This document shows positions 1-58,864 of a stretch of 64,000 nucleotides of DNA, piece after piece. The position numbers and the translations under genes are program-made. Positions within the stretch are counted from its first letter, which is position 1; each line of letters opens with the position of its first letter. Below the pieces are notes generated by a model. It saw only the letters and a program-made list of their open reading frames with translations. It searched no databases and had not been told where the DNA came from. The DNA is from Hyphochytrium catenoides (Eukaryota > Protista > Hyphochytriomycota), in contig FLMG01002472.1 in the NCBI GenBank assembly GCA_900088475.1, positions 18,979 through 82,978 of the forward strand. The letters run 5' to 3'.

Positions 1-90
1 GATGCGAATCCAGAGACCTGATTGGGGGCGTTGAGGGCAGATGTGAGCTAGATGCGGTTTTGGCTTATAAAAGCCTGTCTATACATATAC

Positions 91-510
91 CTGCACAGCC
101 AATTGCTCATTGGTCTTGAGATGCTGTTGAGAGCCCATGATAACCCGGTTATGCCCGACTCCTGCTTGCCTACAGTTGTACGAGATCTCCCCTCTAACCT
201 CAGATCTGCGTAGGCAAGTGTGCTTCCCACCCAGTCTATTTTAATGGGATCAACGGCGAGGATTGAGTTCCATTCTGCCGTGTTCTGCGCTCTATTGCAT
301 GACAAGGCAGAAGGAAGAAAGAGCGGCCCCCAAGCAGCAGGAATCAGCCCTCAAGCATCTCTTTCTTTCAGTGGGAAAGGCCGGCGCCGAAAGGTTTGTT
401 GATGCATCAGATCGTTTGGGGTCAAGTTGCCCTAAAGACCAACAGGGAATATTACTCGTAGGAACTACCGCTCGGCATTGTAGTAGTCGTATATGTAGTT
501 CAGAGTACAG
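91..510 (-). CDS. Internal exons of an unidentified minus-strand gene running off the left edge (partial)
   Basis: 291..91 is a 201-nt open exon (AQNTAEWNSILAVDPIKIDWVGSTLAYADLRL...MSNWLC) with a pyrimidine-rich acceptor and a GTATAT donor. A phase-compatible short exon (CTLNYIYDYYNAER) lies at about 510..469. No family recognised. Confidence 0.35.
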
Positions 511-4925: not shown

Positions 4926-5820
4926 CTTCTTTTTTTCCCGCTGAAACACTAAAGTGAAGGTCTTGGGAGTGCAGGGGCTGAGCAGGGAGTGTGGGGTGTG
5001 AGCTGGACCTACAGTACTGTACTCCTTTAGACCCTCCTAGACCACTCTGATTTATAAGTCTAATTGCACTGTGTAAATAGTCCTACTTGTACTTGGACAA
5101 CTTCAAATGTGAGGGAGCTGGGGAGCTGGACACTGGAGTAAGGAATCATAACTACAAGTACAAATATTAGAACTACTGTAGGAGTGTTGTACGTACTTGT
5201 ACTTTGTAAAGTTGAGGAGCAGTGTGGATGGTCAATAGAATGGGTCCAAGACGGCACAAGCACACAAGACACGAGCAGCTCCTACACAGTATACAGAATT
5301 AGAGGCTGCGAATCAGGTATGAGTGAGGCTCAAATTCTGGATCTACTGGAGGTTCTTTCAGATTTTGCACAATTGTCGAAGTTGAAGGAGCGATGAGAGA
5401 GAAGAGGAAGGCTGGCCTGGCGAAAGGACATCTTCAAGAGAAGCAAAGCCTTTTCTCTACTTTACTGGCAAGATCAGAGGCACAGACGAAGGACGGAGGG
5501 TGCGCTATCGTCACCTCCTGGCGCCCATGCCCGTGCTTCTGGATGTTGAAGATCAAAGGCGAAGAAGAAGGGTAGAGAGAGTGATCATCACTTTCTGGCC
5601 CCTTCCTTGCCCATGCTTTCAGGGTGTATGACGAACTTGGCGCTTGCCGCTAGTTGGCGTCATTAAACGCGTTATAATAGCACTTACTTAGTTGGCGGGT
5701 TCTATCTCATAGCCGGAACGCCAACAATGACTCTCTTAACCTTTGGTCCTAGCGTCGCTAATTACAGGCCCAGTCGTCTTTGATTGCCACTGTTGAAGTT
5801 TGGGGCGTAGCACACTCTTT

Positions 5821-5830
5821 GCCACCATGG
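5821..5830 (+). promoter_or_regulatory. Strong translation-initiation context GCCACCATGG for the giant gene
   Basis: Exact Kozak-type consensus around ATG 5827, followed directly by a signal-peptide-like MVRVQYLYTSLLTQCLLVWAVSNA. Confidence 0.6.
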
Positions 5831-14800: not shown

Positions 14801-17800
14801 GTGTCTTCCGAGATAGTACTTTGCCGGTCCCCCCCATCGTCATATCCGAGTACCATCTGGTTATCTTATGCTCCTGATGGTCTTGTCTTTACCGTTGCGG
14901 AAATGTCATTTCGCTACGAGAACGGCCCTATAGTCCATGAGAGTTACCCTCTAAAGGGCTCTGAACTGGGTGGAACGCTCGTTCGCTTCAGGGGAGAGAA
15001 CTTTTGCGCTGGCCCTTACTCTTGTCTTTATACTGGTTCAGCTGGACCGGTAGCTACGACCGCCAAAGCTTTACAACCAGGACTGCTTGCGTGCAAGTCA
15101 CCACCCTACAGACCTGGGAGAACGTTACTCTCCTTAGTCTCTAAATCGTGTCCTTCCGAAAAGCTGACTTTCGAATATTGGTACCACGAAGCGGTGACAC
15201 TGCGCCATTTAACACCAGCGAGCGGAAATTTGCGAGGTGGCTCTACTGTAAGAATTTACGGCAACAACTTTATCAACAGCTCCTCTATGACCTGCAAATT
15301 CGGCGCAAAGAGGTCCCCAGCAACGTTTTTATCAGCCTCCCAGCTTAGCTGTAAATCTCCGAGCAATGAGGTCGGCGAGGTGCATGTGACGATTAGCGTC
15401 AACGGGTTTGACTACACAAGCGAGCACCTTCTTTTTACCTATGTCAGAGGACTTGAGGTGGTCCAAGTGGAGCCAGCCAGTGCACCCGTGAGTGGGAGCA
15501 CCCGGATACTAGTTCAAGGTACGGTGAGACGAGGTGTCCGAACACTTGTATATTTTATGAGTATTAATTAATGAAACAAGCCCCTGATTGACTTTCACGT
15601 GCAGCGAACTTCTTGCAGGAAACCTACAACGTGACTTGCCGCTGGAGTCATCATGTGGATGCTGTAAGGGGAGTGCGTGAAGCTGAAGGCCTTATCTCCT
15701 GCCTCGCTCCTCCTTCTCCTCGAGCACAGATCGTAAGGCTCGAACTACACGCGGAGGACACATCACTGCCTACGTTTGGCATCCGCTTCCAGTACTTCGA
15801 CCCACCTCTTGTGCAGAGGATTATGCCTTCTTCTGGTAGTGAAATCGGGGGGCCTCCTCTAAGGATCTTCGGAGAAGGGTTTTTCTCATCCTCACTCATG
15901 CTCTGCCGTTTCGGAGAAGAAGAAAGGGACATAACATCTGCTCGCTGGATCTCGTCAACGGAGGTGCACTGTCAACCACCCGTCCGCCAACCGGGAGAGC
16001 TATCGCTATACCTTGCCATGAATGGGGTTGACTTTCTTTCGACTGGTCTCACCTACACTGTGCTACAGAAGTTGGAAGTATTATCGTTGAAGCCCTCCAG
16101 AGGCCCCTTGTCGGGCGGCACAATTGTCCATCTACAAGTCAACATAGTTGTAGCAGCAGGGTGCATCCCTACGTGCAAGTTTGGTGACGTTCCGGTTACA
16201 GGCCGATCGGTTCAAGGCCACGTGATATGCATTGTTCCCCCTTTTTCGGGGTCGTTGTCAGGCCAAGGACGCGAGGATGTTAGCGTTATTCAGGTGCCTG
16301 TTCGGCTCAGCCTGGACGGAGGACCCTTCACCCCCAGCGGTCAGGGTTTTGAATACTACGAGCCCCTCTTGGTTTTCGACTACTCACCCAAATCAGGCTC
16401 GATACGGAAGGGCATCTGGGTAACTCTCATAGGCTATGGGTTTCTACCTAGCCAATTACTTGCTTGCTCATATGGCGGTGTTCTGGTCCCTACACTTTAT
16501 CTGAATCATTCAGCTGTGCAGTGCTATGTGCAAAGCAATTCCTCTACCTTGATGGATGTGGCCGTTAGCAACAACGGCCAAGATTTTGCGGTAGCCGGAG
16601 TCCTTGTAGAGAGGCAAATTCCAACAGTTGGATCGGTATCTCCGCAGTCTGGCTCCATTAGCGGTGGAGGGTACATTATAGTCAGAGGAAGCGGTTTCTT
16701 AGATTCTCGACAACTTAACTGCCGCTTCGGCTTTTTCTCCTCTCCCACCGTCCAGTTCGTTTCTGGGTCCGTACTCAAGTGCCAGGTCCCCGCTGTTGTC
16801 TCTGCTGGCCAAATGGTAGTACAAGTCAGCAACAATGGGTTGGATTTCTCAGAATGGGGCCCGAAGTTTTATTTCTTTGAAGATCCTGTTATTGACAGAA
16901 TAGCTCCTTCCTCTGGACCAGACACTGGAGGAGTGCCGGTATCTGTTTATGGCAGGGGATTCTCTGTGTTTGGTGGACTCTACTGCTTGTTTGGGGATAA
17001 AATGGTCATAGCTACATTCCGCTCAGAGGAAGAAGTTATTTGCAGAAGCCCCTCAGCCATCGAAGCAGCTGGCGAAGGTAGACAATCTCCGTGGTCAGGG
17101 GTGAGTTCTAAGGCGATAACAGTTCGCGTCGTAAACCATATGGGAGAGGGTGGCAACAGCAGTCTCCTTTTCACCTACTTCCAGACTCCTAGAGTGCAAA
17201 GAGTTAGCCCCTCTTACGCCTTTGCTGGCCTTGAAGTCACTTTCGAGCTCCATCTTGACACTCAATACCTGCAACTGGAAGCCTGGGATTGTGTTTTCCT
17301 AGGAGAGAATGTTAATGTGGATCAGACAGAGCGCGCCACACTCTTCGGTCGAAACGGAGTGTCCTATTGCCGTTATACGCCACGCAGCTTGGGATACTAT
17401 CGTGTTGGTCTACTGCAAAAGGAAAGTGGGGCGCTCATCACCGGTAAGGCTAAAAATAAGATGTTTGTCAACTCCCTATTCTTATCCGGTGGGCCCACTG
17501 AGTTGATATTTGTGATGCAGGCCCATATGTGTCGGTGCTCCTGACACCCAAAATCCGCAGTGTGTTCCCAACTGCAATTCCTGTGTCTAGCACGGGAGAG
17601 CTTCATGTTAGCGTAGAGAATCTCGCGACCGATAATTGGTACTGCAATCTGGGCGTCGAGCGGTCGAGAGCCCGATGGCTTGCTCAGGATGTGATTGCAT
17701 GCACATACAATAGTTCGCACTCTCCGGGACTCCTAAGTCTTCAGCTTTCCAACGATCTCTATACCGTCGAACACGAAGGTGGGATAGAAGCCTATCCAGA

Positions 17801-20800
17801 AGAGGTTATCAGTAGCATTCGCCCTCCATCGTGCATCAACAGCGGGAGTTGCAGGGTTACGGTTTCGGGCCATAACTTCAGAAACTCGACGTATCTAAGC
17901 TGCTCCTTTAATGGAAAGCCGGTTCAAGCAAAGTTCCTGTCCACGAGCAAGCTGGAGTGCGTTGCCCCTTACATTGAGGCTGACAGCGAGGGTAAGTTCC
18001 CCAATTTAGTAAGATTCCCGCGACACTGACCTGGGCTTATGCAGGTGCAGTTTCCCTGTTGCTGCGCGTAAGTAACAATGGGGTTGTCTACAGTCAGAGG
18101 TCCGTACCATTGGCTCTATATGGCCAACCGGACGTCACTTCAATCGTTCCGACGAGTGGATTGAATAGCGGTGGGACACGAGTTCAATTGACTGGACACG
18201 CCTTCCCGTCAAGTGCAGTCTGCCTATTCGGGAGGACAGTGGTTGAAGCCACTGTCTTCTCCAGTACCCGGGCCACTTGCATTGCCCCCAAAATGACAGG
18301 CAATACTTCAGTTCACCTATTGCTTACATCTGAAGACTTAGGCTTTGCTGGCTCTGGGCCACTTTTCTCGTATATCGCCAGACCATTAATCTCTAGGTTG
18401 AGCCCCCCGATCGTTGATGAAGATGGCGGGAAAACTGTGACCGTCACGGGGTCCTACCTAGACCACGGCGTTAGTGGATGTCAGTTTGGCAACCTCAAAG
18501 TCACCCCCGTGCAAATCTCCGCTATAGAGGTCAAATGTCGAAGTCCGCCTCTGCCTGTCGGCAAAGTCCGCTTCAGGCTTGTACTCCATGACGCTCATGT
18601 TATAGAGGGTGATGATTTAATTCTGAGTGTGACTCCTGCGGCACAACTGGCCTTTTCGAGACCCAATAGTTCGCCTGTGACAGGAGGAACATATGTGAAC
18701 ATCTTCGGCTCTAACTTTTTTAGCTCTGAGCAGGTTCTCTGCAGGTTTGGATCCTACTTAGTGGCTGCAAAGGTAATCAACGAGAAGCAAATAACGTGCA
18801 AAAGTCCCCCGGCAGAGCATGAGGGTCAAGTGAACCTGACCGTCGCTTTAGATGGAGTGGACTTCCTACCTTCAAACCTTGTATTTTCTTTCACATCTGC
18901 AATCGTTGCTACAGGAATTTATCCATCTCAAGGTTCCCTCCGGGGCGACGCTTCGCTGTATGTGAAGGGTGAAAACTTTCCTGCACGAGCCCTTTACGAA
19001 GGAAGATTCACGTTGCTAAATGAGGTAGTCAGGATAGTCCGCTGCACATTTCTCACCTCCACTGAGGTCAGATGCGACATTCCGTCAGGGCTGCACGAGG
19101 GTGTGGCTGTCTTCCAGCTCTGGGTCGACGGTCAGAGGAAGGGTGACTTTAACTACCAGCTGTACAAGGAGCCCAGGGTATTTGAAGTCTCACCCAAGGA
19201 GATCATGGAAGGAGGGCAGCATTGGATCACTGTTGTGGGTGAAAATTTCATTAAAACGCAGAGCTTAGCTTGCAGACTGGGTGACCTTATGGCAGAACGC
19301 GTAGAACGGGACGACTCTACAAGGGCCAGATGCCTCTTCTCGCTGAAAAAGAGCGGAGTGCTCCCTTTGAGTCTCTCGCTCAACGGCTACGACTTTTTAT
19401 CTTCTGAGGAATCAAGGGAATCAACGGTTCGCGTGATAACGACCCCCACCATTACCCATATTCACCCTTCAAGGGGCCCGCCCTCGGGTGGTACCATCAT
19501 CACGATATATGGCAACAGTCTCTCTCAGGCCGCGAAGGTATATTGCTTTTTTGGATCGTCACTTTCTCTAGCCGTAGTTGTTTCTCATTCGGAGGCCAAC
19601 TGCCGGTTGCCCATGCGCAGCGACGGTACACCCTCTACTCTGCCGGTTGGCTTGGCGATAGAAGACCGAAAGCTCTATGCAGACCACAACTTCAGCTACG
19701 TACCATTGCCAGAAATAGAGTCTATTGAACCATCCGTCGTTACTGTGGGTTCGAGTTCCAAGATAGAATTGAGCGGGAAGAACTTCTTGACGGATCCGAG
19801 TTGCGATATGGTATGCCGATTTGGCTCAACGGTTGTGGAAGCCACTTGCGACGGGCCGACAAAGCTGCTATGTAAGACCCCCGAGTTCACCGAAGAGGGG
19901 GCAGTAGCGCTTGACGTCTCCTATAATTGGAGAGACTGGAGCGTCTCTCGTTTGCTCCTCAGGGTTCTGAATCCACCCTCGATCGTCGATGTGGCTCCTC
20001 TCTTCCTAGACGACGTCGGGGGCACACCAGTCACAATAGTTGGTACTGACTTTGTACCAGGCAAGGTTTTCAGGTGTAAATTTGGAGACACTCTAACCAC
20101 GGTTGCAAGGTGGGTGGATAAAGGGACAATAGTCTGCAAAGCTCCACCTCACAGAGCTGGAGTGGTTTTGCTGTCTGTATCAAATGACGGCATATCCTTT
20201 TCAACGTCGTCCCGGTTAGTGGAGTACCAGACTTCACTTTCAGTATTTAGGTGGAGTTTCCGAGGACCTGAGGACTCAACCATTGCTCTCTATGGAGGTA
20301 TCTTTAGGAAGAGAGATCCTCTTTCTTGCGCATTCCTGGACACCGAACGAGATGGCTCTATGTGGTTTAGTCCTGCTCTTGTTGTCAACACTAGCCTTGT
20401 CCATTGTGATACCCTTGGCCTCCCGCCCGGGAAATACCATCTAGAGCTCACCTTAGATGGTAAGCACTTCACTGGCAACCGCGTCCTTTTTTATGCAGGC
20501 AGTCCACCCACGCTTGAATCCATCTTCCCACGTTGGGGAAGGTCCACGGGTGGCACCGCCGTAACAATTACAGGCCGTGGCTTCAGGGAGTCATCTGAGC
20601 TACGATGTCAGTTTGATGGCAAAGTGCATACCCATGCAGTTTATGTTGACGAGACGCGCATACATTGTCACACTCCGGCCTATGATGTACCTCATACCAG
20701 TCAGATTCTTTTGGTCCGACTAGAAGTCTCCAATTGGGGCAATGTCTACAGCGTTGACGAGAAGACCTTTGGCTTTTACCCAGAACTTACGATAGTCGAT

Positions 20801-23800
20801 TTGGATCCGAAAGCAATAGGGGAGAATGGGGGCACCATTTTCCTATATGGATCAAATTTTCTGCCGTCGGACTACTTGGGTTGCAAAATTGACGAACAGG
20901 AAATGAAAGCCACGTTCATCTCATCTACTCTAATATCCTGTCCGGCACCGTCCCTGGAGCCACGTCAATCAAAGGTGTACGCTACCAACAACGGGGCAGA
21001 TTACGTGGAGAGTCCATACCATCTGGCATACGTTCCCAACAGCGTTTCCTTCGGAATTTTTCCTTGCAGTGGGCCTCTAGAGGGAGGAACAGAGGTGACA
21101 GTGACGGGTCAAAATTTCTTACAAGCAGCCCCGGTGGGGTACCATAGCAAAGTCTTTTGTAGCTTTGGCAAACTCGAGGTGGCAGCTAGCCATGTGTCAG
21201 ACACTGCCATCAATTGTTTCAGCCCATCCTCTCAAATCATTGGTCCGTTACCTTTTTCGGTGATTATGAGATCAACAAGATCAAAGCGGAGAATTGAATT
21301 CTTGGCGCAGAACTTGAGCTTTGCCTACTACCGTCAGCCTTCCCTAAGGGCTGTGGCACCGTCTTCAGGTTAGCATGATGGAAACCTTAGCTAGCTCTAA
21401 CTCTCGTTGCTCTTCTCAGTCTCACTATCGTTTGATGTAGGCAGCTGCTCCGGCGGGTCTCTTATTACACTTCTTGGAGATGATTTCAACCCTGAAGTCA
21501 CCTATTCCGTCCGATTCGCCCTCAATAATGAACAAGTGACGGTGAATGCTACTTACATTTCCAAGGATATATTACAAGTCGTTACCCCTCCAGGCCTGCC
21601 AAACATGGCCGGAAGGCTAGTGGACGTCACGATCAGCGCTAATATGGTAGACTTTGGTCGTGATTCTGCGCTATTCTATTATAATCTTGATAGCCAGATT
21701 CATGCTTTATACCCAAATGAAGTGGATGAGACTGGTGGAGGATTACTCTTGGTCATTGGGAGCAACTTTCGAGAGGTAAGCATGTCGTTTTCTCCTACAA
21801 AACCTGCAGCATGCTAACGTCCATACTTGCCAGTCTTTTCCAAACCTCCTTTCATGTAGGTTTGATGGCCTAACGGTAAAAGAGGCAACATTCCTGAACT
21901 CGACGCATCTTTTATGCCCCTATCCAGCCCATCACCCTGGAAGAGTGATGGTGGAGGTGACGACCAATGGGGTCGACTATTTGGATCAGTCCATAGAGCT
22001 CTTGTACGTTGTTGCCCCTACTATTTTAGACGTACAACCTAGCCTGGGCCCTGCGAATGGAGGCTCAAGAGTCACTATTATCGGAGACAACTTTCGCAGC
22101 GCTTCCCACCACTGCTGCTTTGGTGCCCATAAAGTGCCTTTGGAGTTTATCAATGGAAGCCGTATTGTTTGCACATCTCCGCTCCTGGAGGTTAATGGAG
22201 ACGGTCACGCAGTGCCATTGACAGTGACTTCGAGTCAATGCAAGCTAGATAGTTTGATGGACATGAGACTTGCTCTAACTTCGGAGAGCATTTACCGGCC
22301 ATCATTCTACTTCCATAGTCCGCTTGCTTTAGTTAGCATATCTCCTTCACGCGGCCCCTTGGCAGGGGGGACGGAAGTCTTGGTTACACTGGATCCTATG
22401 CTTGAAATGGGTGGAGTCTACTGCAAATTTGGTGACCTCGTCGTCCAGGGGTCCACTTTAGGCCCTACTCTAGTACAATGCACTTCTCCCGCACAACCCA
22501 ACCTGGGCCTCAGAAATGGAGTGGTCCAAGTGTCATTGAGCTTCAATGGTCAGGACTTCTCCATCTCGACTCTGGGCTACACGTATTACAATTCACCAGA
22601 AGCAGTCAGAGTGAATCCTCGGTTTGGGACAACTGACAAGGAAACCACGGTTTTAATTATTGGTTCAGGCTTTACTTCGGCATTCCCTTCTGCTTGTCGC
22701 TTTGGGTTTTCCGAAGCTACCGCAGCTGAAGTGCTCTCTTCCACGGAGCTGAGGTGCACTACACCTCCACATCCGGTAGCTGAACTTGTTACTATATTCT
22801 ACTCTTTGAATATGGTAGACTTCTTTGACCTAGGTGTAACCTTCGAGTACACTTTCAGACCAATAACATACCAGATCCGGCCGACGTTTGGCTCTCTAAG
22901 CGGTAATACCCTGTTGACCGTGGTTGGTAGCAACTTTGCCGAGGCTGCCGAGTTGTGGTGCATTATTGGAGGGATGCCTGTTCCTGCAACTCCCATATCG
23001 ACTGAGGAGGTTACTTGTCGAACCCCATCATGGGACAAGTTAGAACTGGAAAAACTGGAGGTGTCCCCTCCTTTGGAAGCAGCAGTATACGTTATGGAAA
23101 GCCCCACACCAGGTTTCTTGGAGAATTATTCCGGAAAACGAAACCTACCCGATAGCTATGTCTTGTTTCAATATGTGGCCGAATTAGAGATTGTCTCAAT
23201 CTTTCCCCGCTCCGGCTATACTCGTGGTGGTACTAGAGTTGACATCCGAGTTCAAAACCTGCAGAACTCCTCAGCAACGGGATGCCGTTTTGGAGGAATT
23301 AGGGTGCCAGCTACCCTCATCAGTTCTGGAGAACTGTCGTGTCTAGCTCCCGCCGTAAACCAAACGGGCGTCGTACCTCTGGAAGTAACCACGAACGGGG
23401 TGGACTTCTCTACCGCAGTTCAGTTTGATTATCGCCTGGAGCCCAATATTTACAAAACCACGCCCGGTAGAGGAGGATGGAAAGGTGGTTCTCAAGTGAC
23501 AATAACTGGGTCCAATTTCTATCCAGACAGCAAAATCACTTGCATGTTCGGAAGTCAGGTTGTTAGAGGGTCATACGTTGACAATGAGAATGTATTGTGC
23601 CTGACACCACCAGGGGAGGCAAGGAATGAAATCCAAAGAATATCTCTATTTGCATCGCCCGCCTGGGATCCGGAAGTGCAGAGAGTGACGGTTAAGGGGG
23701 CGAGTCATGCCGAGGAGGTCCAGGTGATATCTACCTCCGCGTGGGGAGATGTGCAAGAGGTGCAAGAGCTGAGCATAGCACTGCCAATCAATAATCCGGA

Positions 23801-26800
23801 GATTCAAGTCATAAGTACAAGACTGACTCATCGACTTGAAGTACAAGAGGTAAGCTTGGATGGAACCGCTTTTGTAGCTGAGGAGCAACGGCTTTCAATC
23901 GTTTGGGAGAAAGGAGCCGACGTCAGTGGCATTGTAAAATTGACCTACAATGACCAAAAAACCGATGGGCTTCTGTGGGACGCACTGTCTTCTGAGCTGA
24001 TCGAGGAGGCGCTGTCAAAGCTGAGGGGCATGAACAGGCCAAAAGTCAGAGTTGAAGACACACCGATGTCTAAAGACCTGATCGTAACGTTTACGGGTAC
24101 CATGGGTGATCTGAATGATCTTCAGCTTGATATCTCGCAGTTGAGCGGCAGAGGTCTTCAATGGCAGAGCATTGAAGTCGTTAAGGGAATACCAGCAGCG
24201 ATACAGTCAGTTATCCTCCAGACAACTAACGCCACATCCGTGACAGGCTCCTTTTGGTTGGGCTTTCAGGATGCGAAGAGCGACCCTATCCACCCGCGCT
24301 CATCTGCCCTCGAATTTGCCGCCGCCCTCCGCCCACTTTTCTCCGTCGTAGGGCAGCTAAATGTTTCCGGTCCGGTGAGGAACACGTATGGCGGCTGGAC
24401 TTGGGAGGTGTCTTTCGTCCAGAGAGGAGGTCCTCTTAACCTTTTGAGGCCTAATTCGTCTCTCTTGTCAGGTGGGGGCTATGACGGTGTATCGATAGAG
24501 GTCAGAGAAAAAGTAGCTGGGACTAGCGCTCAAGTAAGTGGCTCCTTTGCTATTGTCGCGCACAATGGCAAGCGCAGTGGCCAAATCTCCGTTAAGGCCA
24601 ATCCTGCTGACCTTGAGAGCGCTCTTGGCGCACTGGAGCTGGGTCCCATCAAGGTGACGGAAGGACCACAGGGCTGGAATGGCGGCAAAGCGTGGCGATT
24701 AACCTTTCAGGCACCAGGGAGTGTACCGGCACTGACAGTTGATACTTCAAATGTTATGGGAACAGTTCCACAGTGGAATGTGCTCAGGCAAAGTAAGGGA
24801 ACGGACCCTGTTGTGCATGAAGTCACATTTAGTTGTCCGAACAGTGCGACCATCTCGGGCCCCATATACTTTGTATATAATGGGGAGGAGACAGCAACGG
24901 TTTCATTAGCTACATTATCAGAGATGCAGCTAACTACACTTTTAGCTGCCTTGCCATCAATTGGTTCAGGTGGTGTGAGTGTTTCAGCTGAGCTGTCATC
25001 GTTACATAGCCAAAGTTATGAAGTTACGCTAAAACAACCCCCATTTCTGGATCCCAAGACTATACCCGAACTCATGGTGGGCAATCCTGCAGCTGTGACT
25101 TGTGGAGGAATCGTGGGCGTCGCACAGTCAGTTGTGAAGCTAATTGGCAACCCCTTGCAGCCTCTGACTGGTGAAGTTCAAATATCCTTTGGATCTGAGA
25201 GAGTCAATGTCCCTTACGACTCTTCCTCAACCGAAATGGCCTCAATTCTCTCCGTAATTCCCGCTGTCGGTAAGGTTAGAGTGTCACGGACGGCCGTTGA
25301 CGTTAACCTTAAGACTTTCGCATGGTCTGTTACATTCATTGAAAGAGCTGGAGCTCTTCCCCTCTTCGCAGTAGACGACTCGCTTTTGCAGACAAATGGT
25401 GTGGCGGCAGTTACCGCTGACCGAGTTACTAGCAGCGGTGATCGTTGCTGCCTGACGGGGACCTTTACTCTTTCCTATGGTGGCCATACAAGACTCCTTC
25501 CTGGTACAGCAGCTGCGACAACCGGAGCGACGGCGGTAGTTACGTCGGAGGATTTGAGGTCCTTCATTGCCGCCGGCGATGATGTATCCATTGGCGGTAC
25601 TGTGTACTCCGTCGACACGAGTGGGCTTTTTTCCGCGACTTCTCTGCCCCTTAACATGACCTACGTGGGTCCTACGCGGACTGGGATTGAAATTTATACT
25701 CAGTTTAGAACCGCGGCATTAAATGTTGGGTCGTCGGCTAGCCAGATTTCAGCGGCGCTGGACGGCCTTCCGCAACTTGGGGATCAGATCAACGTCTCGC
25801 AAATAAGCGCATCTCCGAACGGTTTGATGGCGTGGAGAGTAACGTTCCGAAGCCCAGGACCTCGATCTCTCATTCGAATGAACGCTGAGCAGGTGAGCAT
25901 TACGGATGGCACTGCTCTGGCAGCTATCGGAGGTGTCAGGAGGATACAGTCTGGAAGCTTAGGGCCAGTTCAACGTGTCTTCCTTACGGCACCAAGCCTC
26001 ATTATGTCCGGTAGCTTCCGCTTATCTTACAAAACATGGCTCTCGCCGTTTCTACCTTTTGATGCTCCATCCTCACTCGTCAAAGAAACATTGGAAGACT
26101 CAGGACTCTTTGCATCAGTAACGGTCATAAGGACTAGGGCGGATGAGCACCCTGACATACCTGGCATAGGGTATGTATGGACAGTAACTTTTCATTCTAT
26201 CGCTACTAATCTCAACCCCATTGAAGTGATTCCTAACGTGGAGACGCAGTTTCATGGCACCGCAGCGTATGGGCAAGGGTTGCCTTTCACTGCGGCAACT
26301 GGGAGTACTCTCTCAGGTTTATTCTGGCTGGTCTACGACGGTCTCGTAACGCTGCCACTCTCGTATGACGCTTCGGCCGAGGATGTTGAAAATGCCCTTA
26401 ATCAGATTCGAAGCGTACCGCGCGTGACTGTCAGTCGCGAGGGACCTGATCTAAATCAGGGCTATACCTGGACTGTAACCTTCAAGGACAGGCCTCTACC
26501 ATTGAAGGAAGTCTCTACCACCTTTGTGGAACGACGACAACTTGTGGCTCATCATGACCTTTCAGGCACATCGCCCGCAATATCCGTCAGGAAGGTTGTA
26601 GCTGGTTCAAGGCCCTCAGGTTACTTTCGCCTGGCATTCGCGGGTGCTCTGACTCGAGCCATCCCTTATAATGCCACGGCAGAAACGGTAAAGTTAGCAC
26701 TCGAGGAGATTCCCTCATTGGCTCTACACCGGGTAACAGCAGAAGACAGGACTGAATTAGCATACTCTTGGCTTGTAACGTTTGCGAACGCGGATGATAT

Positions 26801-29800
26801 CGGCCTTTTATCTGTGGGGGAAAGTCATCTGGGCGCAACGAGCTCAGAAGTGATGGTTGAGCAGGTCAGTGATGGGACTGTTGCGTTGGGCGGAAAGTTC
26901 TCAATAGAATATGAAGGCTATGCGACAACCCTCCTTCCGGTCAATAGTGGTCCTGGTGCCGTGGAAGAAGCCTTCACTTCATTAGCCTCAGTTGGTAAGG
27001 TCAAAGTCACGCTTTCTCAGCAGTCCGACAAGAGAGTCGCTTGGGACATTGAGTTTTTGACCCTGGGCAATCCCGAGAACCTTGGTCTCCTGCCACTTGT
27101 AACACTACATACACACTTGGTGTACGGTACTGAGGTTCAAGGTGAGGTAAGAAGAATACAGGACCCCTGCTGCACTTTACGTGTCTCTACCAATGGAGTA
27201 GACTACAGTAGCGACCAATCGTTCTTTCAGTATGAGGAAGGACCAATGGCACTGGAGGTTTTACCTTCATATGGTTCGACTCAGGGTGGTACTCTTGTCA
27301 AGGTTAGGGGGAGAAACCTTGCTGATCATGGCATCCACTATTGCCTTTTCGGAGATGCGCCAGAGGTGCTTGCAGAGTGGCTGGATAGCACTTTCTTAGC
27401 TTGCACCACCCCCTCGCATGCTGAAGGGCTGGTGGAAGTCAAACTCAGTCGGTGGCCCTCCCTCGATGGCGCGAGTCCTATCATCGGAAATTCCATTGCT
27501 TCTTATCGCTTTCTGCCAGATATTGAAATCCTCGACATATTCCCCAAAAAAGGGAAGCCATCGGGGGGCACCAGGCTTACTATCTCTGGAATAGGCTTTC
27601 TCGAAGATCCTCTCCTTGCCTGCAGATTCCGCTCAACTCCAGATGTATCGATCCAGAAAGCTAAGGAGGTTAAAGTATCTGCACAGTTCATAAACACCAC
27701 CCACATTACCTGTGACACACCAGGCATTGGATCCTTTTTCAGCAACACCAATGAGTCCTGGGAAGGTCGTGTGTCAGGCTTAAGCCATGTCGAGGTGACC
27801 GCGAACGGCATCGACTATTCTATCAACAGTGCCACTTTCTGGTATATTCCTCTGCTGGCTATAGATGCCATCTATCCGATACGAGGTCCATTATCTGGTT
27901 CTACACCTGTGGTGGTGACGGGTGCCAGATTTAGCAGCCCTACTTACTGCCACTTTGGTGAAGCATCACCATACGAAGCTGAGTACGTTTCGGATAGGTC
28001 CGTCATCTGCTCCAGCCCCTCTCACGAGGTCCAAAGCTCTATACAGCAAGTATCAGCCACCTGGGATACTCTCGTCTCCGAGATCCAAAAGATTTCTCTG
28101 AAGAGTACGACGCCGATTGCCACGCTACCTGGTTACTTCACTCTCTCACTAGGTACCTATATCTCCGATCCTCTACTCCCAACTTCGCCAGCCACGGGTG
28201 CAGGGTCCTTGGGAGAAACCTTGCAAAAATTGCCCCAGGGATTCGGCGTTACAGTAGACAGGATTATATCTACCGATGGACTAGAAGTTCAGTGGACAGT
28301 CACCTTTCCCGATGCCTACGGGGATGTTCCTCCAATTAGGGCAGATCCATCACACTTGGACGGAAAGGCCGTTCAGATGTGGGTGGAGACCTTAAGGGAG
28401 GGTGATATGGGGAGCATCAAGTCAGAAGTGCAGGTGATTAGTACCGTGCAGCCGTACCAATCCAACCAAGTGGACATAATAGTCCAAAACAACCTTGTCC
28501 CAACTCTAGAGGTTGGGAGACTGACTCTGGCAGCAGATGACAGGGTCTCCGGAGAGTTTTTTCTTCTGTACAATGGAGCTGTTTCTCCAGCATTACCCTG
28601 GAATGTGTCTGCCGCCGCCCTCTCTTCGACCATTTATACCCTGACGGGCCTGGAGGTTGTGGTTTCAAGGCTGAGCCACGCCTCCCGTGGCTTCATATGG
28701 AATGTGACGGTTCAGCGTTTTGCTTCCATTCTATCAGAACTAAGCGTCAGCTCTCACAACCTGGTTTGTACCACGGGGTGCGCGATTACGCTTCGCTTGA
28801 CATTGATACAAGGCCTCGTGCCGGAGGTGGACGGTTACTTCACAGTCAGCCATGGTGGTAGACACACCCAGGATATTCCATATGATGTTTCTTCCCTAGA
28901 CCTTCAGAAAGAGTTGCAGGCAATATTACCTGTAGAAGTGGTAGTCAGCTCGGCGTTGCCTGGTAATTCTTCCAGAATCTGGAGAATTACTTACATCGCC
29001 CCAGGAACCTACGACATCGATGTCATGTGGGTCAACCGAACGCAAGCTGCAGCAACAATTGAGCGATATGTGGTTAAGGACGGATCTACTCAAGCCGAGG
29101 GCGAATTCCGAATTGGCTTAGGAACTCTTTGGTCTTCATGGCTGCCCTTTGACGCCTCTGCGGAGAGAGTCAGACAGGCGTTACACTTGGATCTCGGGGC
29201 ATCTGGCCTTACTTCGAATATCGTCGTTGAAAGATTGACACTTTCAGCTGGAGCTGATATCGTGGATTATGAGTGGACCATTCTGTTTGATCCCCAAGGA
29301 GGTGACGTACCCTCTTTGGTACTTGACAAATCACGACTAAACGGCGAGTCTGTGGATATGACAGTGACCACCGTAGTCAATGGGAACTTCGTTCCCCGAT
29401 CAGGATCTTTTGCTCTTTCGTTCGAGGGGATGACAACATCAACACTGCCATACAATGCAGATAGTCGTACTCTTAGCCTAGCATTGGGAAGCCTTGCCAC
29501 CATTTCTGATTTGTCCGTGGCGCAGGAAATTACACCTAGTGGCATCACATGGCAAGTTACCTTCAGAAGCAGCAATCGGCAGCGGCCGTTAGGCCGACTG
29601 CCAATGCTGCAAGCGAACGCTGTGGATTTGCAGGGAAACGGGGCTACTCTCGATGTGTACGAAGTTTTGCCTGGCTATGGTCCAAGCGTCGCTGTCGGCG
29701 TTTCGGCGAATAAGAAAGACATCGTCTTTTCAAGCGTAAACTTCGAATATCATGAAGCTTTGGATGTCCAGTCATTTTCTCCAACAGTGGGAGGGGAACG

Positions 29801-32800
29801 GGGAGGTACGGAGGTTATAGCTAGTGTGGATGCATCGCCCGGTGTCATGTTTCCGGAAGCGGGTGTCTTCGCATTTCAAGCTTCAGATCTGGGGGTACGA
29901 TGCCGCTTTGGTGATGAAGTGGTGGGGGGAAAGGTAGTATCGGCTAGGACGGTCTCCTGTACCTCACCCCCTCATGTTCCCGCAACCGTTATATTTGGTG
30001 TTTCTTTGAATGGAATAGATTTTTACCACTGTCTACAGCGCTACACCTTTCTCAAGGAAATGGATAATTTCCTGCTTGTTCCAGTACGGGGGCCATTGGA
30101 GGGCGGCAACACTTTGACTGTTTACGGAGCATTCGCTGAAGCGACTGCGGCACTTGGGGAGGAAGGAAGTAACAGCAACGGCACCTTTAGCTGCCGCTTC
30201 GACGGACAAGATAAAGCGCAGGTTGCTAGTGTCGTTGCCACGGACTTCATTACGTGCGTCGCACCACCTTCAACTTCTCCTGGACCCGTGGCGGTTCAGG
30301 TCCTTCTGAACTCTCAGGAGGTTACTCTTGCATCAACACAATACTACTACGAACCGAATTGGTATGTGACAGAAGTAGTTCCCTCATCTGGACCTGCTAG
30401 AGGTGGAACGATAGTGTCAATCCGGGGTGGACGATTCCGAGACTACAACTCAGATCTTCTGTGTCGGTTCGGATCCAAGGTGGCCAAGGCGCGCTGGATA
30501 TCAGAAAACGAGCTAAGCTGCGAAACTCCATCTCAGAGCCCCGTTGATGAAGTTCAGGTACTGGATATAACACCAACGACTTCGCAGGGTATCACTGGTA
30601 CCTTCGCCCTGAGTGGGGGTGAAGTTTGTCTCGAGGATTTGGAGGGCATTTATTGTGAGACTCCCAAGACGGCAGCCCTGCCCGCTAACGTTAGTGCTTT
30701 TGTACTGCAACATGAGCTAGAGCTTCTTCAGGTGAATGGACCGGTGAAAGTCTCTGTTGCTTCTCCATCCGTCCCGACTGTTTTCAGATACTTAATCACA
30801 TTCACCGGCGGACTCGGAGCCATCCCCCTACTGCAAATAGCTGAAAATAGCCTTGATCAAGGCACGGCCATGATGAGCCGGTTGGTGTCTGGTAAACGAC
30901 AAGCTGCCATGACTGTGCCTTTGCATATCTCGTTCAATGGGCAAGACTTCGTGGCTGGAGGGTACAACATCAACTTTACCTACCATGATGAAGCCTTGGT
31001 ATCAGAGATAGTGCCTGACAGGGGGCCCTTAACAGGCCATACTGAAGTCTTGGTGCTTGGCGAGAACTTCATCAACCATGCTGGTCTAGCATGCAGCTTT
31101 GGAGAATCTCCGGAGGCTGTTGTTGCTGTATCCCGCTTCATCAACAGTTCCGCGGTCATCTGCATATCTCCCCGGTCTCTTAGGGAACATCCTACAGAAG
31201 TCATCGTCAGGGTTTCGAATAGCTTCAATGGCGCGCTGGAAGGCTTCTCGTCCATTGGTGTTCCTTTCCGCTATGAAGAAGTCCTTTCTGTTAGCGACCT
31301 GGTGCCATTCCAGGGCCCAGTATCGGGCAATTTCTCCGTTAGAGTGCTTGGCAAACACTTTTCTAACTCTTCGAGATTACGTTGTCGCTTCGGCAGCGTA
31401 GTTGTTAAGGGCCTCTGGAAGAGTCATGAAGAGATGCTTTGTATGGCTCCTCCCCACCCGGCCGGGATGTATCCTGTGTCCGTTTCCAACAATGATCAAG
31501 ACTATGCGTCCTCCAAAGCTCCTTTCTACTTCTACCCTGACCCCTCCCTTTCTCGTATAGTTCCGATAGCAGGACCTGCCCTGATTGGTGGCACAGCCGT
31601 GACTGTTCATGGCAGAGGCTTTGTCAATTCGTCCCTTCTCGGTTGCCGCTTTGCCAACGTTACTGTACCGGCAGAGTTCCGCAGCGCGAGTGAGATAGTG
31701 TGTAGGTCTCCCTCTGTCACAACAATCATAAGGAACGTTTCCGAAGTTCTGGGGCGGTACTCTCTTTCCGAGTTCCGAACCCGCCATCCGAACCCAATGA
31801 CTGGCAGTCGCTTGTTGTTTCCTGGATCACAGTACTATCCTACTTACCTGGCCAAGCTTGTCGGCTTAGAGGTGACAAATAATTGGCAAGACTACACAGA
31901 TAATGGTATAACTTACCTATACCAAGCTGATGCCTTGGTGACAGGAATCTTCCCCCGATCGTCCTGGGACAGTGGCAGAATATCTCTCTTCGTTCAGGGC
32001 AGAAATTTCGTGAACTCAACCCACCTCTCGTGTCGCATCGGGGAACAATTAGTACATGGTTCGTTCCTGAGTGACACCCTTGTCCTTTGCCATGGGCGGT
32101 CACACGCGCTGGAGCGGCCTCAGCAAGGCTTTTACAGTCACCATCTCCCTCAGACGAAGAACCTTCCCCATGCAATGAAGGGCGTTCCAGGTCCAAAGGA
32201 TCCAGCCTCACTTTATGTAGAAATCTCTAACAATGGTGTTGATTTTACTTCTAGTCGCACGGTTTTCGAGAGCCTTGGGCCCTGTCCAACTGGTTCCTAT
32301 TGCCCTCTTGGCGTTGGGACAGCCAAGTACATCTGTCCACGCGGAGCCTACTGCCCTGGCTCTCAAAACGCGAACTTCACCCTCTGTCCTGCCGGCACTT
32401 ACCAACCATCCTATGGTCAAAATGACTGCCTCCGTTGTCCTATCGGGTACATTTGTCCTGAGTTAGGCATGCATGTGCCTAGAATTTGTCCCGCGGGCTT
32501 CGTTTGTGATGTTAGCGGGTTAGTTAGCGCAGAACAACCATGCCCTGAAGGACATTTTTGTCTAGAAGGAACAGCGACAACTGTGACTACATGCGGGCAT
32601 CCCAGGCCGTCTAGCAGGCTATTCCCGACACTATCACACGCTGAACTCCCGACAACGTTCCGGAGGAATCGTCGACCAGAGGGCTCAAGGCTTGTGCTCG
32701 GTGCTAGAAATGCAGGCTGCTGGAGTAATAGCACTTCTGACTTTGGGCTCCAGGTTAGCGATGAGCCTGCCCGGTTTTGGATGGAGAGGCATCTGATGCC

Positions 32801-35800
32801 CTTAGCAGCAGATTCCCCTTTTAAGCCGTTTCGAGGTCGGTACTGCCTGGATGATAGCTGTATGCTGCTAGATGATCTGGAAAATCTGGCTGTCGCAGAC
32901 TATGCCTTCGATTACTCCTCCACGGCTTTTGCTATGCGCAGGCCCGTTCCGTGCCCAGCAGGAACTTATTGTCACCCAGGCACCGCCAGCGAACTCACTA
33001 CAATGCGAAACCTAAGCTCCCCTCAGCCTTGTATCGAAAGCATGTACTGCCCGACTGGTACCACTAGTCCGCATGGAGTAGGTGATTGTCCGCGGGGATT
33101 TTATTGCCCGTTTGGTGAGAAGTTACCATGCCCCGCAGGAACCTACTGTCCACGCTCAGGACTGTTCGATCCGCTTCCATGCGCGCCTGGAACCTTTAAT
33201 GCTATGGTCGGGCAAGAAAGTTGTACACTGTGCCCTGCTGGATACATATGCCCTGGTTTCGGTCGCCTGCAACCCACAATTTGTCCAAATGGATACGTTT
33301 GCAGCAAAGAGACTCTAGCCTCGCCAAATATTCGGTGCCCCAAGGGATTTTTCTGCCCCAACGGCACCATTACGTCTGATCCATTCCGCAACGATACTAC
33401 TCTAAGACCTTACCCCTGCGCGCCAGGAAGTTTCTGCATGGGTGGTGTTGGGTACGACGAGGTCCGACCTGGTGATTTCCTGTATGCCCAGCCGTGTAAG
33501 CCAGGCTTCTACTGTGAGCTCGCATCGGTATCTCCTCAAGGTTCAGGTCTTTGTCCCAAAGGATTTTACTGTCCGGAAGGGACGGCGGTACCTATCCCTA
33601 CGCCTAAGGGCAAGTATGCTGCCACAGAGGGAACTGTACGACCAGCAGACTGCTTGCCAGGTTACTACGCGCCAACTATAGAGACTGTACTTTGCTACCC
33701 ATGCCCCCCTGGAACCGAGTGCGAAAGCGACGGGATGAGTGAGGCTGTGGTCTGCCCCCCTGGTACATATAGAGGCTCTCTGGAGGACGATGGTATCACT
33801 TGTCTTCCATGCCCTAAGGGTACATGGTCTAAGAATTGGGAACTCCGAGATATTTCTGAGTGCACGCCTTGCCCAACAGGAACAGTCTGTCCAACCGATG
33901 GTATTATGGCGCCTTGCAGTATGGCAGATCTTCCCACGCCTTACGAGCCTGTGACTGGAAAGATGCTAAATCAGGAGGACTGTCTCAAGTTGGGAAGTAA
34001 CTACTTCTTTGGGGTCCTCTTAGAGCCATGGATTGATAACAAGGGTAGAGGGCCACACTTCCGGTCATGGAGAAATGGCACCTGCTTTTACAACAGACAG
34101 AAGGACGGCTCTGTGGTGTACCAACGGTTCAGAGATTACTTTGGGCCCATGTTCGATATAGTAAGGGGCGTGCCGCATCAAGGATATGGAGACGCTGGGC
34201 AAGTAACCCCACCTCACTTTTTCGGTCGGGGGTCCTTGTACATCAATCTGGACAACTCGCGTAAGTTCAACCAGACCTTTAACTGTACTCCTGGATTTTT
34301 CCAGTGGAACGATATTTTGCAAGGAGACCAGTGGTATCCAGGAACTTGTGAAGCAGATATTTTTTGCTACTCTTCGGAACCTTCAAGGGTAAAGCCTTGT
34401 CAGGAAGGGTTTGTCTGTGATGAGCGGACGGGCTTCGTGGAACAGTTCCGCAGCCCTTGCAAAGAAGGTTATGTATGCGACTTTGGAACAACACCAGATA
34501 CCTCATTACTAGCTCCTCAAGGGCAGTACAAACGGCTATGCCAAGAGGGGTATTATTGTTTAGATGAGTCAGGACCAAGTACTTTCAAGAACTTTCCTTG
34601 CCCGACAGACTACTTTTGCCCGACAGGTACCGCCCGACCAATGATTGGTTTGATGGCGAACGATGCTTTGAATCGGCAGCTAGACACACAATCAGCAGAT
34701 CCTTTCTTCAATGTTGTTCACCAAGTGGGGCTCTCCATTGATGACCACAAACTCATTTCCGACCACGATTTCCGTTGTCTGAAAGGTGCTAGCCAGGAGC
34801 TGCAGCAAAACTACATCTATCAAAGGGATCCCGTCAATGGCAAAACCAACTGGACTACCGTGGCGATTATGAATGACCTTTACTGCGGCAGGGACCACAA
34901 ATGGAGACACGTGGCGAACGCTATTCACCGCAAAGTTTGCAACTGCACGCAGCAGATGCAGGTTATCCAGCGTATCTTTGAGTTTTGGAAGTGTACCACC
35001 AACCTCTCTAAACAATTTGATGACATTGGCTATGCATCTTTTGAGGCTGTAGGTGGTGGCTATGACGTCTGGCACCCTCGAAGGAAGCTGCTGTCTGCTA
35101 ATCAATGCCGCTATTACTCTCAAAATGGCGGGCTACGGGACTATCGGGCTGAATTAGAATCCGGTGGTGTGAGCTTTCGATGGGCTTGGGCAAACACAAG
35201 CCGCTTTGGATCCTACGAGAACCTGAAGCAGTTGGTGACAGAAGAATTTGATCGACAGGAATTAGAGTTGGCCTTCCAGCAAAGATGGGAAGTAGATCCA
35301 TTTCTTTACGATATCTGGGCTGGGCTGCGCCTCATCAATCAATACGGCGACAATGTGCCCGAGCTTATCAAGCTCAATTTGACTACAATGGAACCCCTCC
35401 GTCTGGATGTCTGCGAGTGCCAACACCTTCTTCGGTGTCCAAATGGGACCTCCTCGACTGCCTACAGCAAAAGTGTGTTCGATTGCGGGGGCTTGAAGGA
35501 CCCAGTTGTCATCAGAAGGTTCATGCCAATCCCTCTTACAAACGGTAGACTTGATAATGGAACGGACTTCAAAATGCTGACTGGCTCAACCGGCACTGCT
35601 GGACTTGGTCAAGTGGAGTTGCAAACTATGGAGGTAGCCATACTTTCACTGAACTTTACTAGTATGTCCACGAACCTTACGTATGGGCAACATTATGAGA
35701 TCTCTGCTTATGTGGGTTGCAAGCCCTGCCCACCGCAATACATGTGCCGGTATGACCTAACAGAGCCGTATTGTCTTTCCCCCTCTGAGGATGATCAGAG

Positions 35801-58815: not shown

Positions 58816-58864
<49 letters not shown>

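What the first reader, a model, noticed from the sequence alone, without database searches (positions are those of the whole stretch)
23590..32210. All inserts sit in the same IPT loop, implying a branched ectodomain
Seen: each EVQ insert lies between the C-x-(S/T)P motif and the V-S-x-NG-x-D strand of one IPT domain (LCLTPPG/TLRVSTNGVDY; ICSSPSH/VAVGVSANKKD; SCETPSQ/VPLHISFNGQDF). Insert size falls 10, 5, 1 units toward the membrane, spaced about three IPT domains apart. The last two IPT domains carry unrelated 35-45 aa insertions in that same loop (about 31715-31860 and 32100-32210). Inference: a linear stalk with graded lateral branches encoded in one polypeptide.
Basis: partly seen in the sequence, partly recalled or inferred. 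Interest (0 to 1): 0.8.

Follow-up and report, generated by a model that had tools for sequence, protein, structure and literature searches.

The report
Side arms inserted in IPT stalk domains
In a giant stramenopile membrane protein, three immunoglobulin-like stalk domains are each split at the same loop by 10, 5 or 1 copies of a small phage-like domain, so one polypeptide very probably makes a rod with side arms; the insertion site is conserved in relatives, the 10-5-1 size gradient is not.

Summary
ORF 21945-36734 (4929 aa) is the 3' part of a gene with about 61 IPT/TIG domains. Three IPTs are cut after the C-x-x-P strand by arrays of 10, 5 and 1 units of about 100 aa. An orphan F-G half follows each array. 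The arrays lie three IPTs apart, and the last two IPTs carry 45- and 33-aa insertions at the same site.

The joined halves score as full IPTs. In AlphaFold models the halves re-form one IPT across the 123-aa and the 552-aa insert (rmsd 1.2-1.9 A to IPT structures). In 33 related stramenopile proteins, 58 of 59 arrays follow a truncated IPT. The arms are therefore side branches by topology. I could not measure their angle because no coordinates were available.

The 10/5/1 gradient is not conserved; relatives show 1/5/9, 12/5/12 and 8/5/13. Only the 5-unit middle array recurs.

The unit has no Pfam or NCBIfam model. It is homologous to the repeated domain of mycobacteriophage Bxb1 tail-tip cage protein gp23 (E 2.5e-41).

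Extra 'EVQ' strands balance strand-less units, 10/10, 5/5 and 1/1 here. This fits recursive nesting up to seven deep but does not prove it. The scan has already reported such nesting in FN3-hosted genes of this genome.

The parts
23436..23615 (+). Split IPT 1, N-half (strands A-E, ends LCLTPPG; aa 498-557)
   Evidence: Pfam TIG 40.3 bits over profile 1-59/84; own HMM positions 2-59
23616..23906 (+). Lead of array 1: seven EVQ-type strands about 14 aa apart, six lone and one belonging to unit 1 (aa 558-654)
   Evidence: Motif list, sequence, lead length 100 aa / 14
23907..27173 (+). Array 1: ten ~100-aa units (aa 655-1743). Units 2, 4 and 7 have their own strand. Six units have none.
   Evidence: Unit HMM hits E 1e-18 to 1e-29; linkers
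27174..27245 (+). Split IPT 1, C-half (strands F-G, TLRVSTNGVDY...FQYEE; aa 1744-1767)
   Evidence: Own HMM positions 68-87, 11.9 bits; joined construct matches positions 2-87 at 61.5 bits against 52.8 for the N-half alone
27237..27851 (+). Two intact IPTs between arrays 1 and 2 (aa 1765-1969)
   Evidence: IPT HMM
27849..28025 (+). Split IPT 2, N-half (ends ICSSPSH; aa 1969-2027)
   Evidence: Pfam TIG 34.5 bits, profile 3-59/84
28026..29687 (+). Array 2: five units with strand pattern 2,3,0,0,0 (aa 2028-2581)
   Evidence: the same layout in 9 orthologues
29688..29759 (+). Split IPT 2, C-half (VAVGVSANKKD...FEYHE; aa 2582-2605)
   Evidence: Own HMM positions 66-87. In model B, single IPT domains align over residues 1..636 with 83-86 residues at rmsd 1.2-1.9 A
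29754..30359 (+). Two intact IPTs between arrays 2 and 3 (aa 2604-2805)
   Evidence: IPT HMM
30354..30536 (+). Split IPT 3, N-half (ends SCETPSQ; aa 2804-2864)
   Evidence: Pfam TIG 46.1 bits, profile 3-58/84
30537..30914 (+). Array 3: one EVQ strand plus one unit (aa 2865-2990)
   Evidence: Unit HMM E 6e-22. Model A: strand 166-174, then beta-beta-alpha-beta4 body, pLDDT 80-96
30915..30992 (+). Split IPT 3, C-half (VPLHISFNGQDF...FTYHDE; aa 2991-3016)
   Evidence: Own HMM positions 66-86. Model A residues 102..409 align to MET IPT1-2 with 171 residues at rmsd 3.6 A, skipping the insert
30987..31544 (+). Two intact IPTs (aa 3015-3200)
   Evidence: IPT HMM
31719..31856 (+). 45-aa insertion without a unit in the E-F loop of the IPT at aa 3198-3330
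   Evidence: Gap analysis; deleting the loop raises the HMM score from 56.9 to 62.2 bits
32106..32216 (+). 33-aa insertion without a unit in the E-F loop of the last IPT (aa 3328-3450)
   Evidence: Gap analysis; deleting the loop raises the score from 36.7 to 44.4 bits

Best explanation
The 4929-aa ORF is the membrane-proximal part of a giant stramenopile surface protein. The protein has about 61 IPT/TIG domains in a row, then a Cys-rich region. A multipass membrane module probably follows in later exons.

Three IPT domains host domain insertions in the loop between strand E (C-x-x-P) and strand F. The chain leaves the IPT, builds an arm of 10, 5 or 1 small domains, and returns to supply strands F and G of the same IPT. 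The stalk then continues. Each arm is therefore a side branch that leaves the stalk at the pole of the IPT facing the next domain.

The arm domain is beta0 (the EVQ strand), beta1, alpha, then four more strands. It is related to a phage virion domain. Its two ends lie together, which suits it for insertion into a loop.

Multi-unit arms probably close by recursion. A lone EVQ strand runs outward, further units are inserted in the tight turn between beta0 and beta1, and the strand-less body follows on the way back. By strand count this gives nesting up to seven deep in array 1 and four deep in array 2, with some complete units as side beads.

Shown: the split site, the re-formed IPT, conservation of the site, and the homology of the unit.
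Inferred: the direction of the arms, the nesting, and the function. The likely function is a rigid, branched adhesive or sensing ectodomain.
For: Sequence:
- N-halves match Pfam TIG positions 1-59 of 84 only.
- Joined halves match HMM positions 2-87 and gain 8-12 bits. The natural downstream sequence gains 1.5-6 bits.

Model A (aa 2704-3112): pLDDT 88, pTM 0.74.
- MET IPT1-2: Z 11.9, 171 residues, rmsd 3.6 A over model 102..409.
- Plexin A1 IPT3-6: Z 14.3, 262 residues over model 2..409. This means three IPTs in series with about 147 residues left over.

Model B (aa 1969-2604): pLDDT 75.
- EBF3, MET and CAMTA1 IPTs align from residue 1 to 636 with 83-85 residues at rmsd 1.7-1.9 A.
- An Atlas IPT aligns 86 residues at rmsd 1.2 A.

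Family:
- 64 arrays in 33 proteins.
- 58 of 59 arrays follow a truncated IPT, against 28% of other IPTs (p 1e-29).
- F-strand motifs follow 50 of 57 arrays.
- All 40 loop gaps that hold units are E-F gaps.

Membrane end: transmembrane segments lie at the C-terminus of complete orthologues.

Unit:
- The unit profile hits Bxb1 gp23 at E 2.5e-41 and the Bxb1 major capsid protein at 2.7e-4.
- Fold match to the capsid protein: Z 11.0, rmsd 1.9 A, 87 residues.

Nesting:
- Linkers are quantised at about 0, 13 and 44 aa.
- Strand count equals unit count in all three arrays here (10/10, 5/5, 1/1) and in 20 of 36 other arrays resolved by linker length; 10 more differ by +1.
- 35 of 36 obey the bracket rule that strands never run short.
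- Lone strands equal strand-less bodies in 7 of 18 distinct patterns; 5 of 10,000 shuffles reach that.
- The pattern 2,3,0,0,0 is kept in 9 orthologues at 21-28% identity.
- All lone strands are predicted as beta strands.
Against: - No coordinates or contact maps were available. Which strand pairs with which body, and the angle of the arms, were never seen.
- Model B has pTM 0.43 from only 9 sequences, so its inter-unit packing is not reliable.
- Strand counts are estimated from linker length divided by 14. They miss exact balance in 16 of 36 arrays, mostly by +1 to +3.
- Related sequences inflate the agreement.
- Expression rests on one 267-nt contig in two soil RNA runs.
- The membrane module was not assembled into a gene model.
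- The gradient of arm size is specific to this gene.
Confidence: 0.72

Rival explanations
1. Donor-strand exchange between molecules. The lone EVQ strands of one protein fill the strand-less bodies of a neighbour, or of a second copy. The arrays would then be zippers that polymerise or dimerise the protein, rather than self-closed arms.
For: Strand-less bodies and surplus strands exist. Ten of 36 arrays have one strand more than they have units. The homologous phage protein gp23 builds a multi-chain cage (PDB title and molecule name).
Against: Strands and bodies balance within each array in all three arrays here and in 20 of 36 other resolved arrays. The order obeys the bracket rule in 35 of 36, which exchange between molecules would not require. 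The IPT halves on either side must meet in any case.
Confidence: 0.12
2. Plain loop of beads. The arrays are inserted in the IPT loop, but the units are ordinary tandem domains. The lone EVQ strands form a separate beta-meander spacer, and the array closes as a floppy loop without nesting.
For: Model B has a low pTM (0.43). Strand counts are only approximate. No contact data exist.
Against: A spacer would not need to scale with the number of strand-less units. Yet leads of 2, 4, 7 and 9 strands go with arrays that have matching deficits. Units without a beta0 strand would each have an open sheet edge. Linker lengths are quantised and conserved.
Confidence: 0.13
3. In-line reading or artefact. 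The orphan F-G segments are not part of the preceding IPT, so the units lie in series with the stalk. Alternatively, the arrays are introns or assembly errors.
For: When the split IPTs were left in the training set, HMMER aligned the first EVQ strands to IPT strands F and G.
Against: With a clean HMM, the natural downstream sequence adds 1.5-6 bits and the joined halves add 8-12. Both models rebuild the IPT across the insert. The ORF is open for 4929 codons. The units are conserved protein domains. Two DNA samples give the same sequence.
Confidence: 0.03

Closest known systems
IPT/TIG stalks of plexins, MET/RON and fibrocystin-type receptors
   Same: Tandem IPT domains form an extracellular rod ahead of a membrane anchor. 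The model's three IPTs superpose on plexin A1 IPT3-6 (Z 14.3) and MET IPT1-2 (Z 11.9).
   Different: Pfam finds no Sema, PSI or kinase part in this ORF. There are about 61 IPTs. Three of them host large domain arrays in the E-F loop. I know of no such insertion in those receptors (own knowledge, not searched exhaustively).
Mycobacteriophage Bxb1 virion domain: tail-tip cage gp23 (PDB 9d93), C-terminal domain of the major capsid protein (9d9w)
   Same: Same domain family. EVQ strand, G-x-F-x-L strand, T..I.YNAS loop, helix, W/Y-x-V-T-F strand. Profile E 2.5e-41. Z 11.0, rmsd 1.9 A, 20% identity. PHROG tail sheath and major tail protein families match 15 and 12 of 53 units. In gp23 the profile aligns as three N-terminal parts followed by C-terminal parts, which also looks nested.
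   Different: Here the domain is eukaryotic and sits inside IPT loops of a membrane protein. The apparent split point is after beta0, not after beta2. The gp23 coordinates were not inspected.
Recursive domain insertion in cyanobacterial RNA polymerase beta' SI3 (six levels; Protein Sci 2026, PMC13114784)
   Same: One small beta-rich domain family is inserted into itself repeatedly (A1-B1-C-B2-A2...), with some hosts carrying more than one insert.
   Different: Different fold, cytoplasmic enzyme, bacterial. Here the outermost host is an Ig-like stalk domain, the inferred depth is up to seven, and the result would be a projecting arm.
Integrin beta subunit (beta-I domain inside the hybrid domain inside the PSI domain)
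   Same: Nested insertion in an extracellular receptor, with an Ig-like domain (hybrid) as host. The inserted domain projects from the leg (own knowledge of the integrin structures).
   Different: Two levels only, unrelated folds, one insertion per chain.
FN3-hosted nested EVQ arrays in other genes of this genome and in oomycete 'titin'/FN3 giants
   Same: Same unit family. The scan's notes s1-336106 and s1-343087 report nine-deep nesting in one FN3 domain.
   Different: The host here is IPT, at a fixed E-F site, repeated three times at three-domain spacing along one stalk.

Membership tests
IPT/TIG domain (Pfam PF01833) for the three split domains | Sequence match to the TIG profile above the gathering score | tested here: met
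   N-halves score 40.3, 34.5 and 46.1 bits against the cut-off of 20.9, covering profile 1-59/84. The whole ORF has 15 stretches, E 1e-139.
IPT/TIG domain (Pfam PF01833) for the three split domains | Complete seven-strand Ig-like sandwich including strands F and G | tested here: met
   Joined halves cover own-HMM positions 2-87. In the models, single IPT structures align across the insert with 83-86 residues at rmsd 1.2-1.9 A. MET IPT1-2 aligns 171 residues at rmsd 3.6 A.
Bxb1 gp23 / capsid C-terminal domain family (no Pfam name) | Significant profile-to-sequence match | tested here: met
   Profile of 53 units against PDB sequences: gp23 E 2.5e-41 in 4-5 stretches; major capsid protein E 2.7e-4.
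Bxb1 gp23 / capsid C-terminal domain family (no Pfam name) | Same fold | tested here: met
   Model B residues 77-184 against 9d9w_Aa 307-396: Z 11.0, rmsd 1.9 A, 87 aligned. Patience 8giu_1: Z 9.3. Top Foldseek hits are gp23 chains, E 1e-7.
Plexin / MET receptor families | Sema and PSI domains ahead of the IPTs, cytoplasmic GAP or kinase domain | tested here: not met
   The Pfam scan of the ORF gives only TIG-type families and a sub-threshold Ephrin_rec_like hit. Upstream and downstream exons were not scanned with Pfam.
Cysteine repeat modular proteins (CRMP) of alveolates | Cys-rich ephrin-receptor-like repeats plus a multipass C-terminal module | tested here: inconclusive
   Ephrin_rec_like scores 18.3 bits, below its cut-off of 23.1. 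Hydrophobic segments lie downstream in other frames. Orthologues have 4-8 C-terminal hydrophobic segments. No direct comparison with a CRMP was made.
Recursive (nested) domain insertion | Host halves flank the insert and pack together (A1-B-A2) | tested here: met
   Met for the IPT as host.
Recursive (nested) domain insertion | Inserted units are themselves split hosts (lone strand ... body) at several levels | tested here: inconclusive
   Counts and order of strands and bodies fit, and lone strands are predicted as beta. No contact or coordinate evidence.

The most novel reading that the evidence does not exclude
The arms are rigid trees written as a bracket code. Each lone EVQ strand opens a level and each strand-less body closes it. 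One IPT loop would then carry up to seven levels of self-insertion, with side beads. That is deeper than the six levels given as the most complex example in the 2026 survey of domain insertions. The number of levels would set arm length in steps of about 3 nm. A single polypeptide would encode a branched ectodomain whose arm lengths evolve by adding or removing matched strand-body pairs.
Probability: 0.5. Interest if true: 0.75.

Novelty: new variant of a known kind. Interest (0 to 1): 0.62.

Why it matters
Domain insertion and even recursive nesting are known. Here an Ig-like stalk domain is used repeatedly, at one fixed loop and at a fixed three-domain spacing, as the socket for arms built from a phage-type domain that has no family entry in Pfam or NCBIfam.

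It would give a simple genetic way to build branched, rod-like extracellular structures from one chain.

It also defines a widespread unnamed domain family that links phage virion proteins with giant surface proteins of oomycetes, pelagophytes, brown algae and diatoms.

For annotation, it explains why these IPTs look truncated.

For protein design, it offers two loop sites that tolerate inserts of more than 1000 residues: the IPT E-F loop and the unit's beta0-beta1 turn.

Tried and rejected
- Mixed MAFFT alignments of IPT-only and unit-only fragments mis-aligned the two kinds of domain. Only collinear rows were used for the models (A1, A2).
- My first IPT HMM contained the split domains and aligned EVQ strands to IPT strands F and G. 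I rebuilt it without them.
- Pfam on the 24-26-aa C-halves alone found nothing, because they are too short.
- A single unit against PDB sequences gave only chance hits. The profile was needed.
- Pfam and NCBIfam on 53 units gave only single chance matches.
- The Atlas feature search gave only unnamed eukaryotic clusters.
- Literature searches for the protein family, and for OCM5, found nothing relevant. The Bxb1 structure paper is not held.
- The RNA look-up gave one 267-nt contig only.
- An Atlas match of a 198-aa diatom protein to model B residues 194-603 (126 aligned, rmsd 3.8 A) is compatible with the second lone strand packing on unit 4. Only the range is reported, so it is not decisive.
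- I considered and rejected the idea that the size gradient toward the membrane is a design rule.


Full report
**What is there.** The window holds an open reading frame of 4929 codons at 21945-36734 on the + strand. A six-frame scan with HMMs built from this protein finds 45 further IPT domains at 8245-21998 on the same strand, in changing frames. The ORF is therefore the 3' part of a much larger gene with about 61 IPT/TIG domains. Pfam sees only TIG-type families (E 1e-139, 15 stretches) and a sub-threshold ephrin-receptor-like repeat. There is no hydrophobic segment inside the ORF. Several lie at 37.7-40.2 kb in other frames. Complete orthologues have four to eight hydrophobic segments near their C-terminus. 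The C-terminal direction is therefore toward the membrane.

**Check of the observation.**
- An iterated HMM of the ~100-aa repeat finds 10 units at aa 655-1745, 5 at aa 2056-2581 and 1 at aa 2895-2987, and none elsewhere in the window.
- Each array is preceded by an IPT that ends at the C-x-x-P strand. Pfam TIG matches these N-halves above threshold, but only over profile positions 1-59 of 84.
- Each array is followed by a 24-26-aa segment that matches HMM positions 66-87 of an IPT model built from the eleven unsplit IPTs.
- Joining the halves in silico gives full-length matches (positions 2-87) and adds 8-12 bits over the N-half alone. The natural downstream sequence adds only 1.5-6 bits.
- Three IPTs separate the arrays.
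- The last two IPTs have 45- and 33-aa insertions at the same site without any unit. Ten other IPTs of the ORF have gaps of 2-16 aa there.
- All parts of the observation are confirmed.

**Structure.** Model A covers aa 2704-3112: one IPT, the split IPT with its single unit, and the next IPT. It was built on 31 collinear rows and reached mean pLDDT 88 and pTM 0.74.
- The chain makes strands A-E of the split IPT.
- It then makes a nine-residue EVQ strand (model 166-174) and a tight turn.
- The unit body follows: beta, a hairpin peculiar to this unit, a helix, then four strands.
- Strands F and G follow (model 285-311).
- MET IPT1-2 aligns to model residues 102..409 with 171 residues at rmsd 3.6 A. 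That is two intact IPTs with the 123-residue insert skipped.
- Plexin A1 IPT3-6 aligns 262 residues over 2..409, which is three IPTs in series.

Model B covers aa 1969-2604, the split IPT with five units, on nine orthologous rows. It reached pLDDT 75 and pTM 0.43.
- Single IPT structures (EBF3, MET, CAMTA1) align from residue 1 to residue 636 with 83-85 residues at rmsd 1.7-1.9 A.
- An Atlas IPT aligns 86 residues at rmsd 1.2 A.

The halves therefore re-form one IPT even across 552 residues. The stalk passes through the split domain, and the array is a side branch by topology. In a seven-strand Ig-type sandwich the E-F turn lies at the pole that carries the C-terminus. This follows from established fold topology and was not measured here. 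The arm should therefore leave the stalk next to the junction with the following IPT. I could not measure angles because model coordinates are not exposed.

**Conservation.** Word-based and exhaustive searches returned stramenopile proteins. Named sources are Aphanomyces, Pythium, Aureococcus, Pelagomonas, Chrysophaeum and brown algae.
- Thirty-three proteins combine IPTs and units, with 64 arrays.
- 58 of 59 arrays with a preceding IPT follow a truncated one, against 257 of 932 other IPTs (Fisher p 1e-29).
- 50 of 57 are followed by an F-strand-like motif.
- Pairing N-halves and C-halves across these proteins shows that the E-F turn varies widely in length. All 40 gaps that contain units are E-F gaps.
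- The spacing 'two IPTs, split IPT, array' recurs. So does a five-unit middle array, with an identical internal layout in nine orthologues at 21-28% identity.
- The array sizes do not follow a gradient: 1/5/9, 1/5, 12/5/12, 8/5/13, 8/5/7, 9/5/8 and 6/4/2. The 10/5/1 series is particular to this gene.

**What the unit is.** No Pfam or NCBIfam model matches it. The Atlas gives only unnamed eukaryotic clusters.
- A profile of 53 units, each with its own strand, hits the tail-tip cage protein gp23 of mycobacteriophage Bxb1 at E 2.5e-41. It hits the Bxb1 major capsid protein at 2.7e-4. Both share the motifs EVQ, G-x-F-x-L, T..I.YNAS, a helix, and V-T-F.
- The fold match agrees: capsid C-terminal domain Z 11.0, rmsd 1.9 A, 87 residues, 20% identity. 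gp23 chains are the top Foldseek hits.
- PHROG families annotated tail sheath and major tail protein match 15 and 12 of the 53 units.
- The same unit fills oomycete and pelagophyte FN3 giants.

**How multi-unit arms can close.** Both ends of an array must meet in one IPT turn, so a straight string of ten domains is impossible.
- Linkers between unit bodies are quantised at about 0, 13 and 44 aa. These correspond to none, one or three EVQ strands.
- Arrays begin with runs of strands about 14 aa apart.
- In this gene, array 1 has seven strands in the lead plus three internal ones for ten units. Array 2 has 2+3 for five units. Array 3 has one for one.
- Across 36 arrays resolved by linker length (arrays 2 and 3 of this gene among them), strands minus units is 0 in 20 and +1 in 10. 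In 35 of them strands never run short when read from the N-terminus.
- Among 18 distinct patterns, lone strands equal strand-less bodies in 7. Only 5 of 10,000 shuffles reach that.
- All lone strands of array 2 are predicted as beta strands.
- This fits recursive insertion. A lone strand runs outward, further units sit in the turn between beta0 and beta1, and the body closes the level on the way back.
- Read as brackets, array 1 would be seven levels deep with three side beads. Array 2 would be four deep with one.
- The nesting idea came from other first-reader notes on this stretch. Follow-up reports on FN3-hosted arrays elsewhere in this genome reach the same reading. I tested it only by counts, not by contacts.
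- Recursive insertion has a published precedent of six levels in cyanobacterial RNA polymerase (PMC13114784).
- In gp23 the profile aligns as three N-parts followed by C-parts. This hints at nesting in a solved structure, but I did not see the coordinates.

**Rivals.**
- Strand exchange between molecules, or a floppy loop with a strand spacer, cannot be excluded without contacts. The within-array balance and order speak against both.
- An in-line arrangement, introns or mis-assembly are contradicted by the HMM tests, the two models, the open frame, the conservation and two DNA samples.

**Expression.** Expression is barely documented: one identical 267-nt contig in two soil metatranscriptomes.

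**Verdict.** Branching at one conserved loop is real. The gradient is not a rule. The geometry and the nesting remain inferences.

Noticed in passing
window 8245-21998 (+): 45 more IPT domains lie upstream in changing reading frames, with breaks near 8172, 12450-12800, 15571-15613, 17544-18059 and 21373-21945. These are short introns or indels of one very large gene. ORF 5800-8172 has no IPT hit.
   Followed up: partly
window 27165-27170 (aa 1741-1742); also aa 1166-1169: A vicinal Cys-Cys sits just before the returning IPT F strand. It is conserved after arrays in many orthologues but absent after arrays 2 and 3 here. Its role is unknown.
   Followed up: no
PDB 9ufe chains OCM5/OCM6: The unit profile gives marginal hits (E 0.03 and 0.6) with a convincing EVQ-like strand and G-x-F-x-L motif. 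The names recall Ochromonas mastigoneme proteins, so the unit may occur in stramenopile flagellar hairs. No paper is held.
   Followed up: no
PDB 9d93 gp23 residues 268-606: The phage protein aligns to the unit profile as three N-terminal parts in a row, followed by C-terminal parts. This is possibly nesting at another split point in a solved structure.
   Followed up: no
window 25449-25967 (aa 1170-1341): Unit 6 of array 1 is interrupted after its first strand by about 52 aa of unrelated sequence.
   Followed up: no
window 48559-48678 and 58816-59302: Long AG and CT dinucleotide tracts (about 60 and 250 copies) account for the strong GC and AT skew between 42 and 60 kb.
   Followed up: partly
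window 37700-40250: Hydrophobic segments lie in several frames downstream of the ORF's stop. They are probably the multipass membrane module in further exons.
   Followed up: partly
window 28746-29012: The same 267-nt contig, identical to the window, occurs in two soil metatranscriptome runs from different studies.
   Followed up: partly
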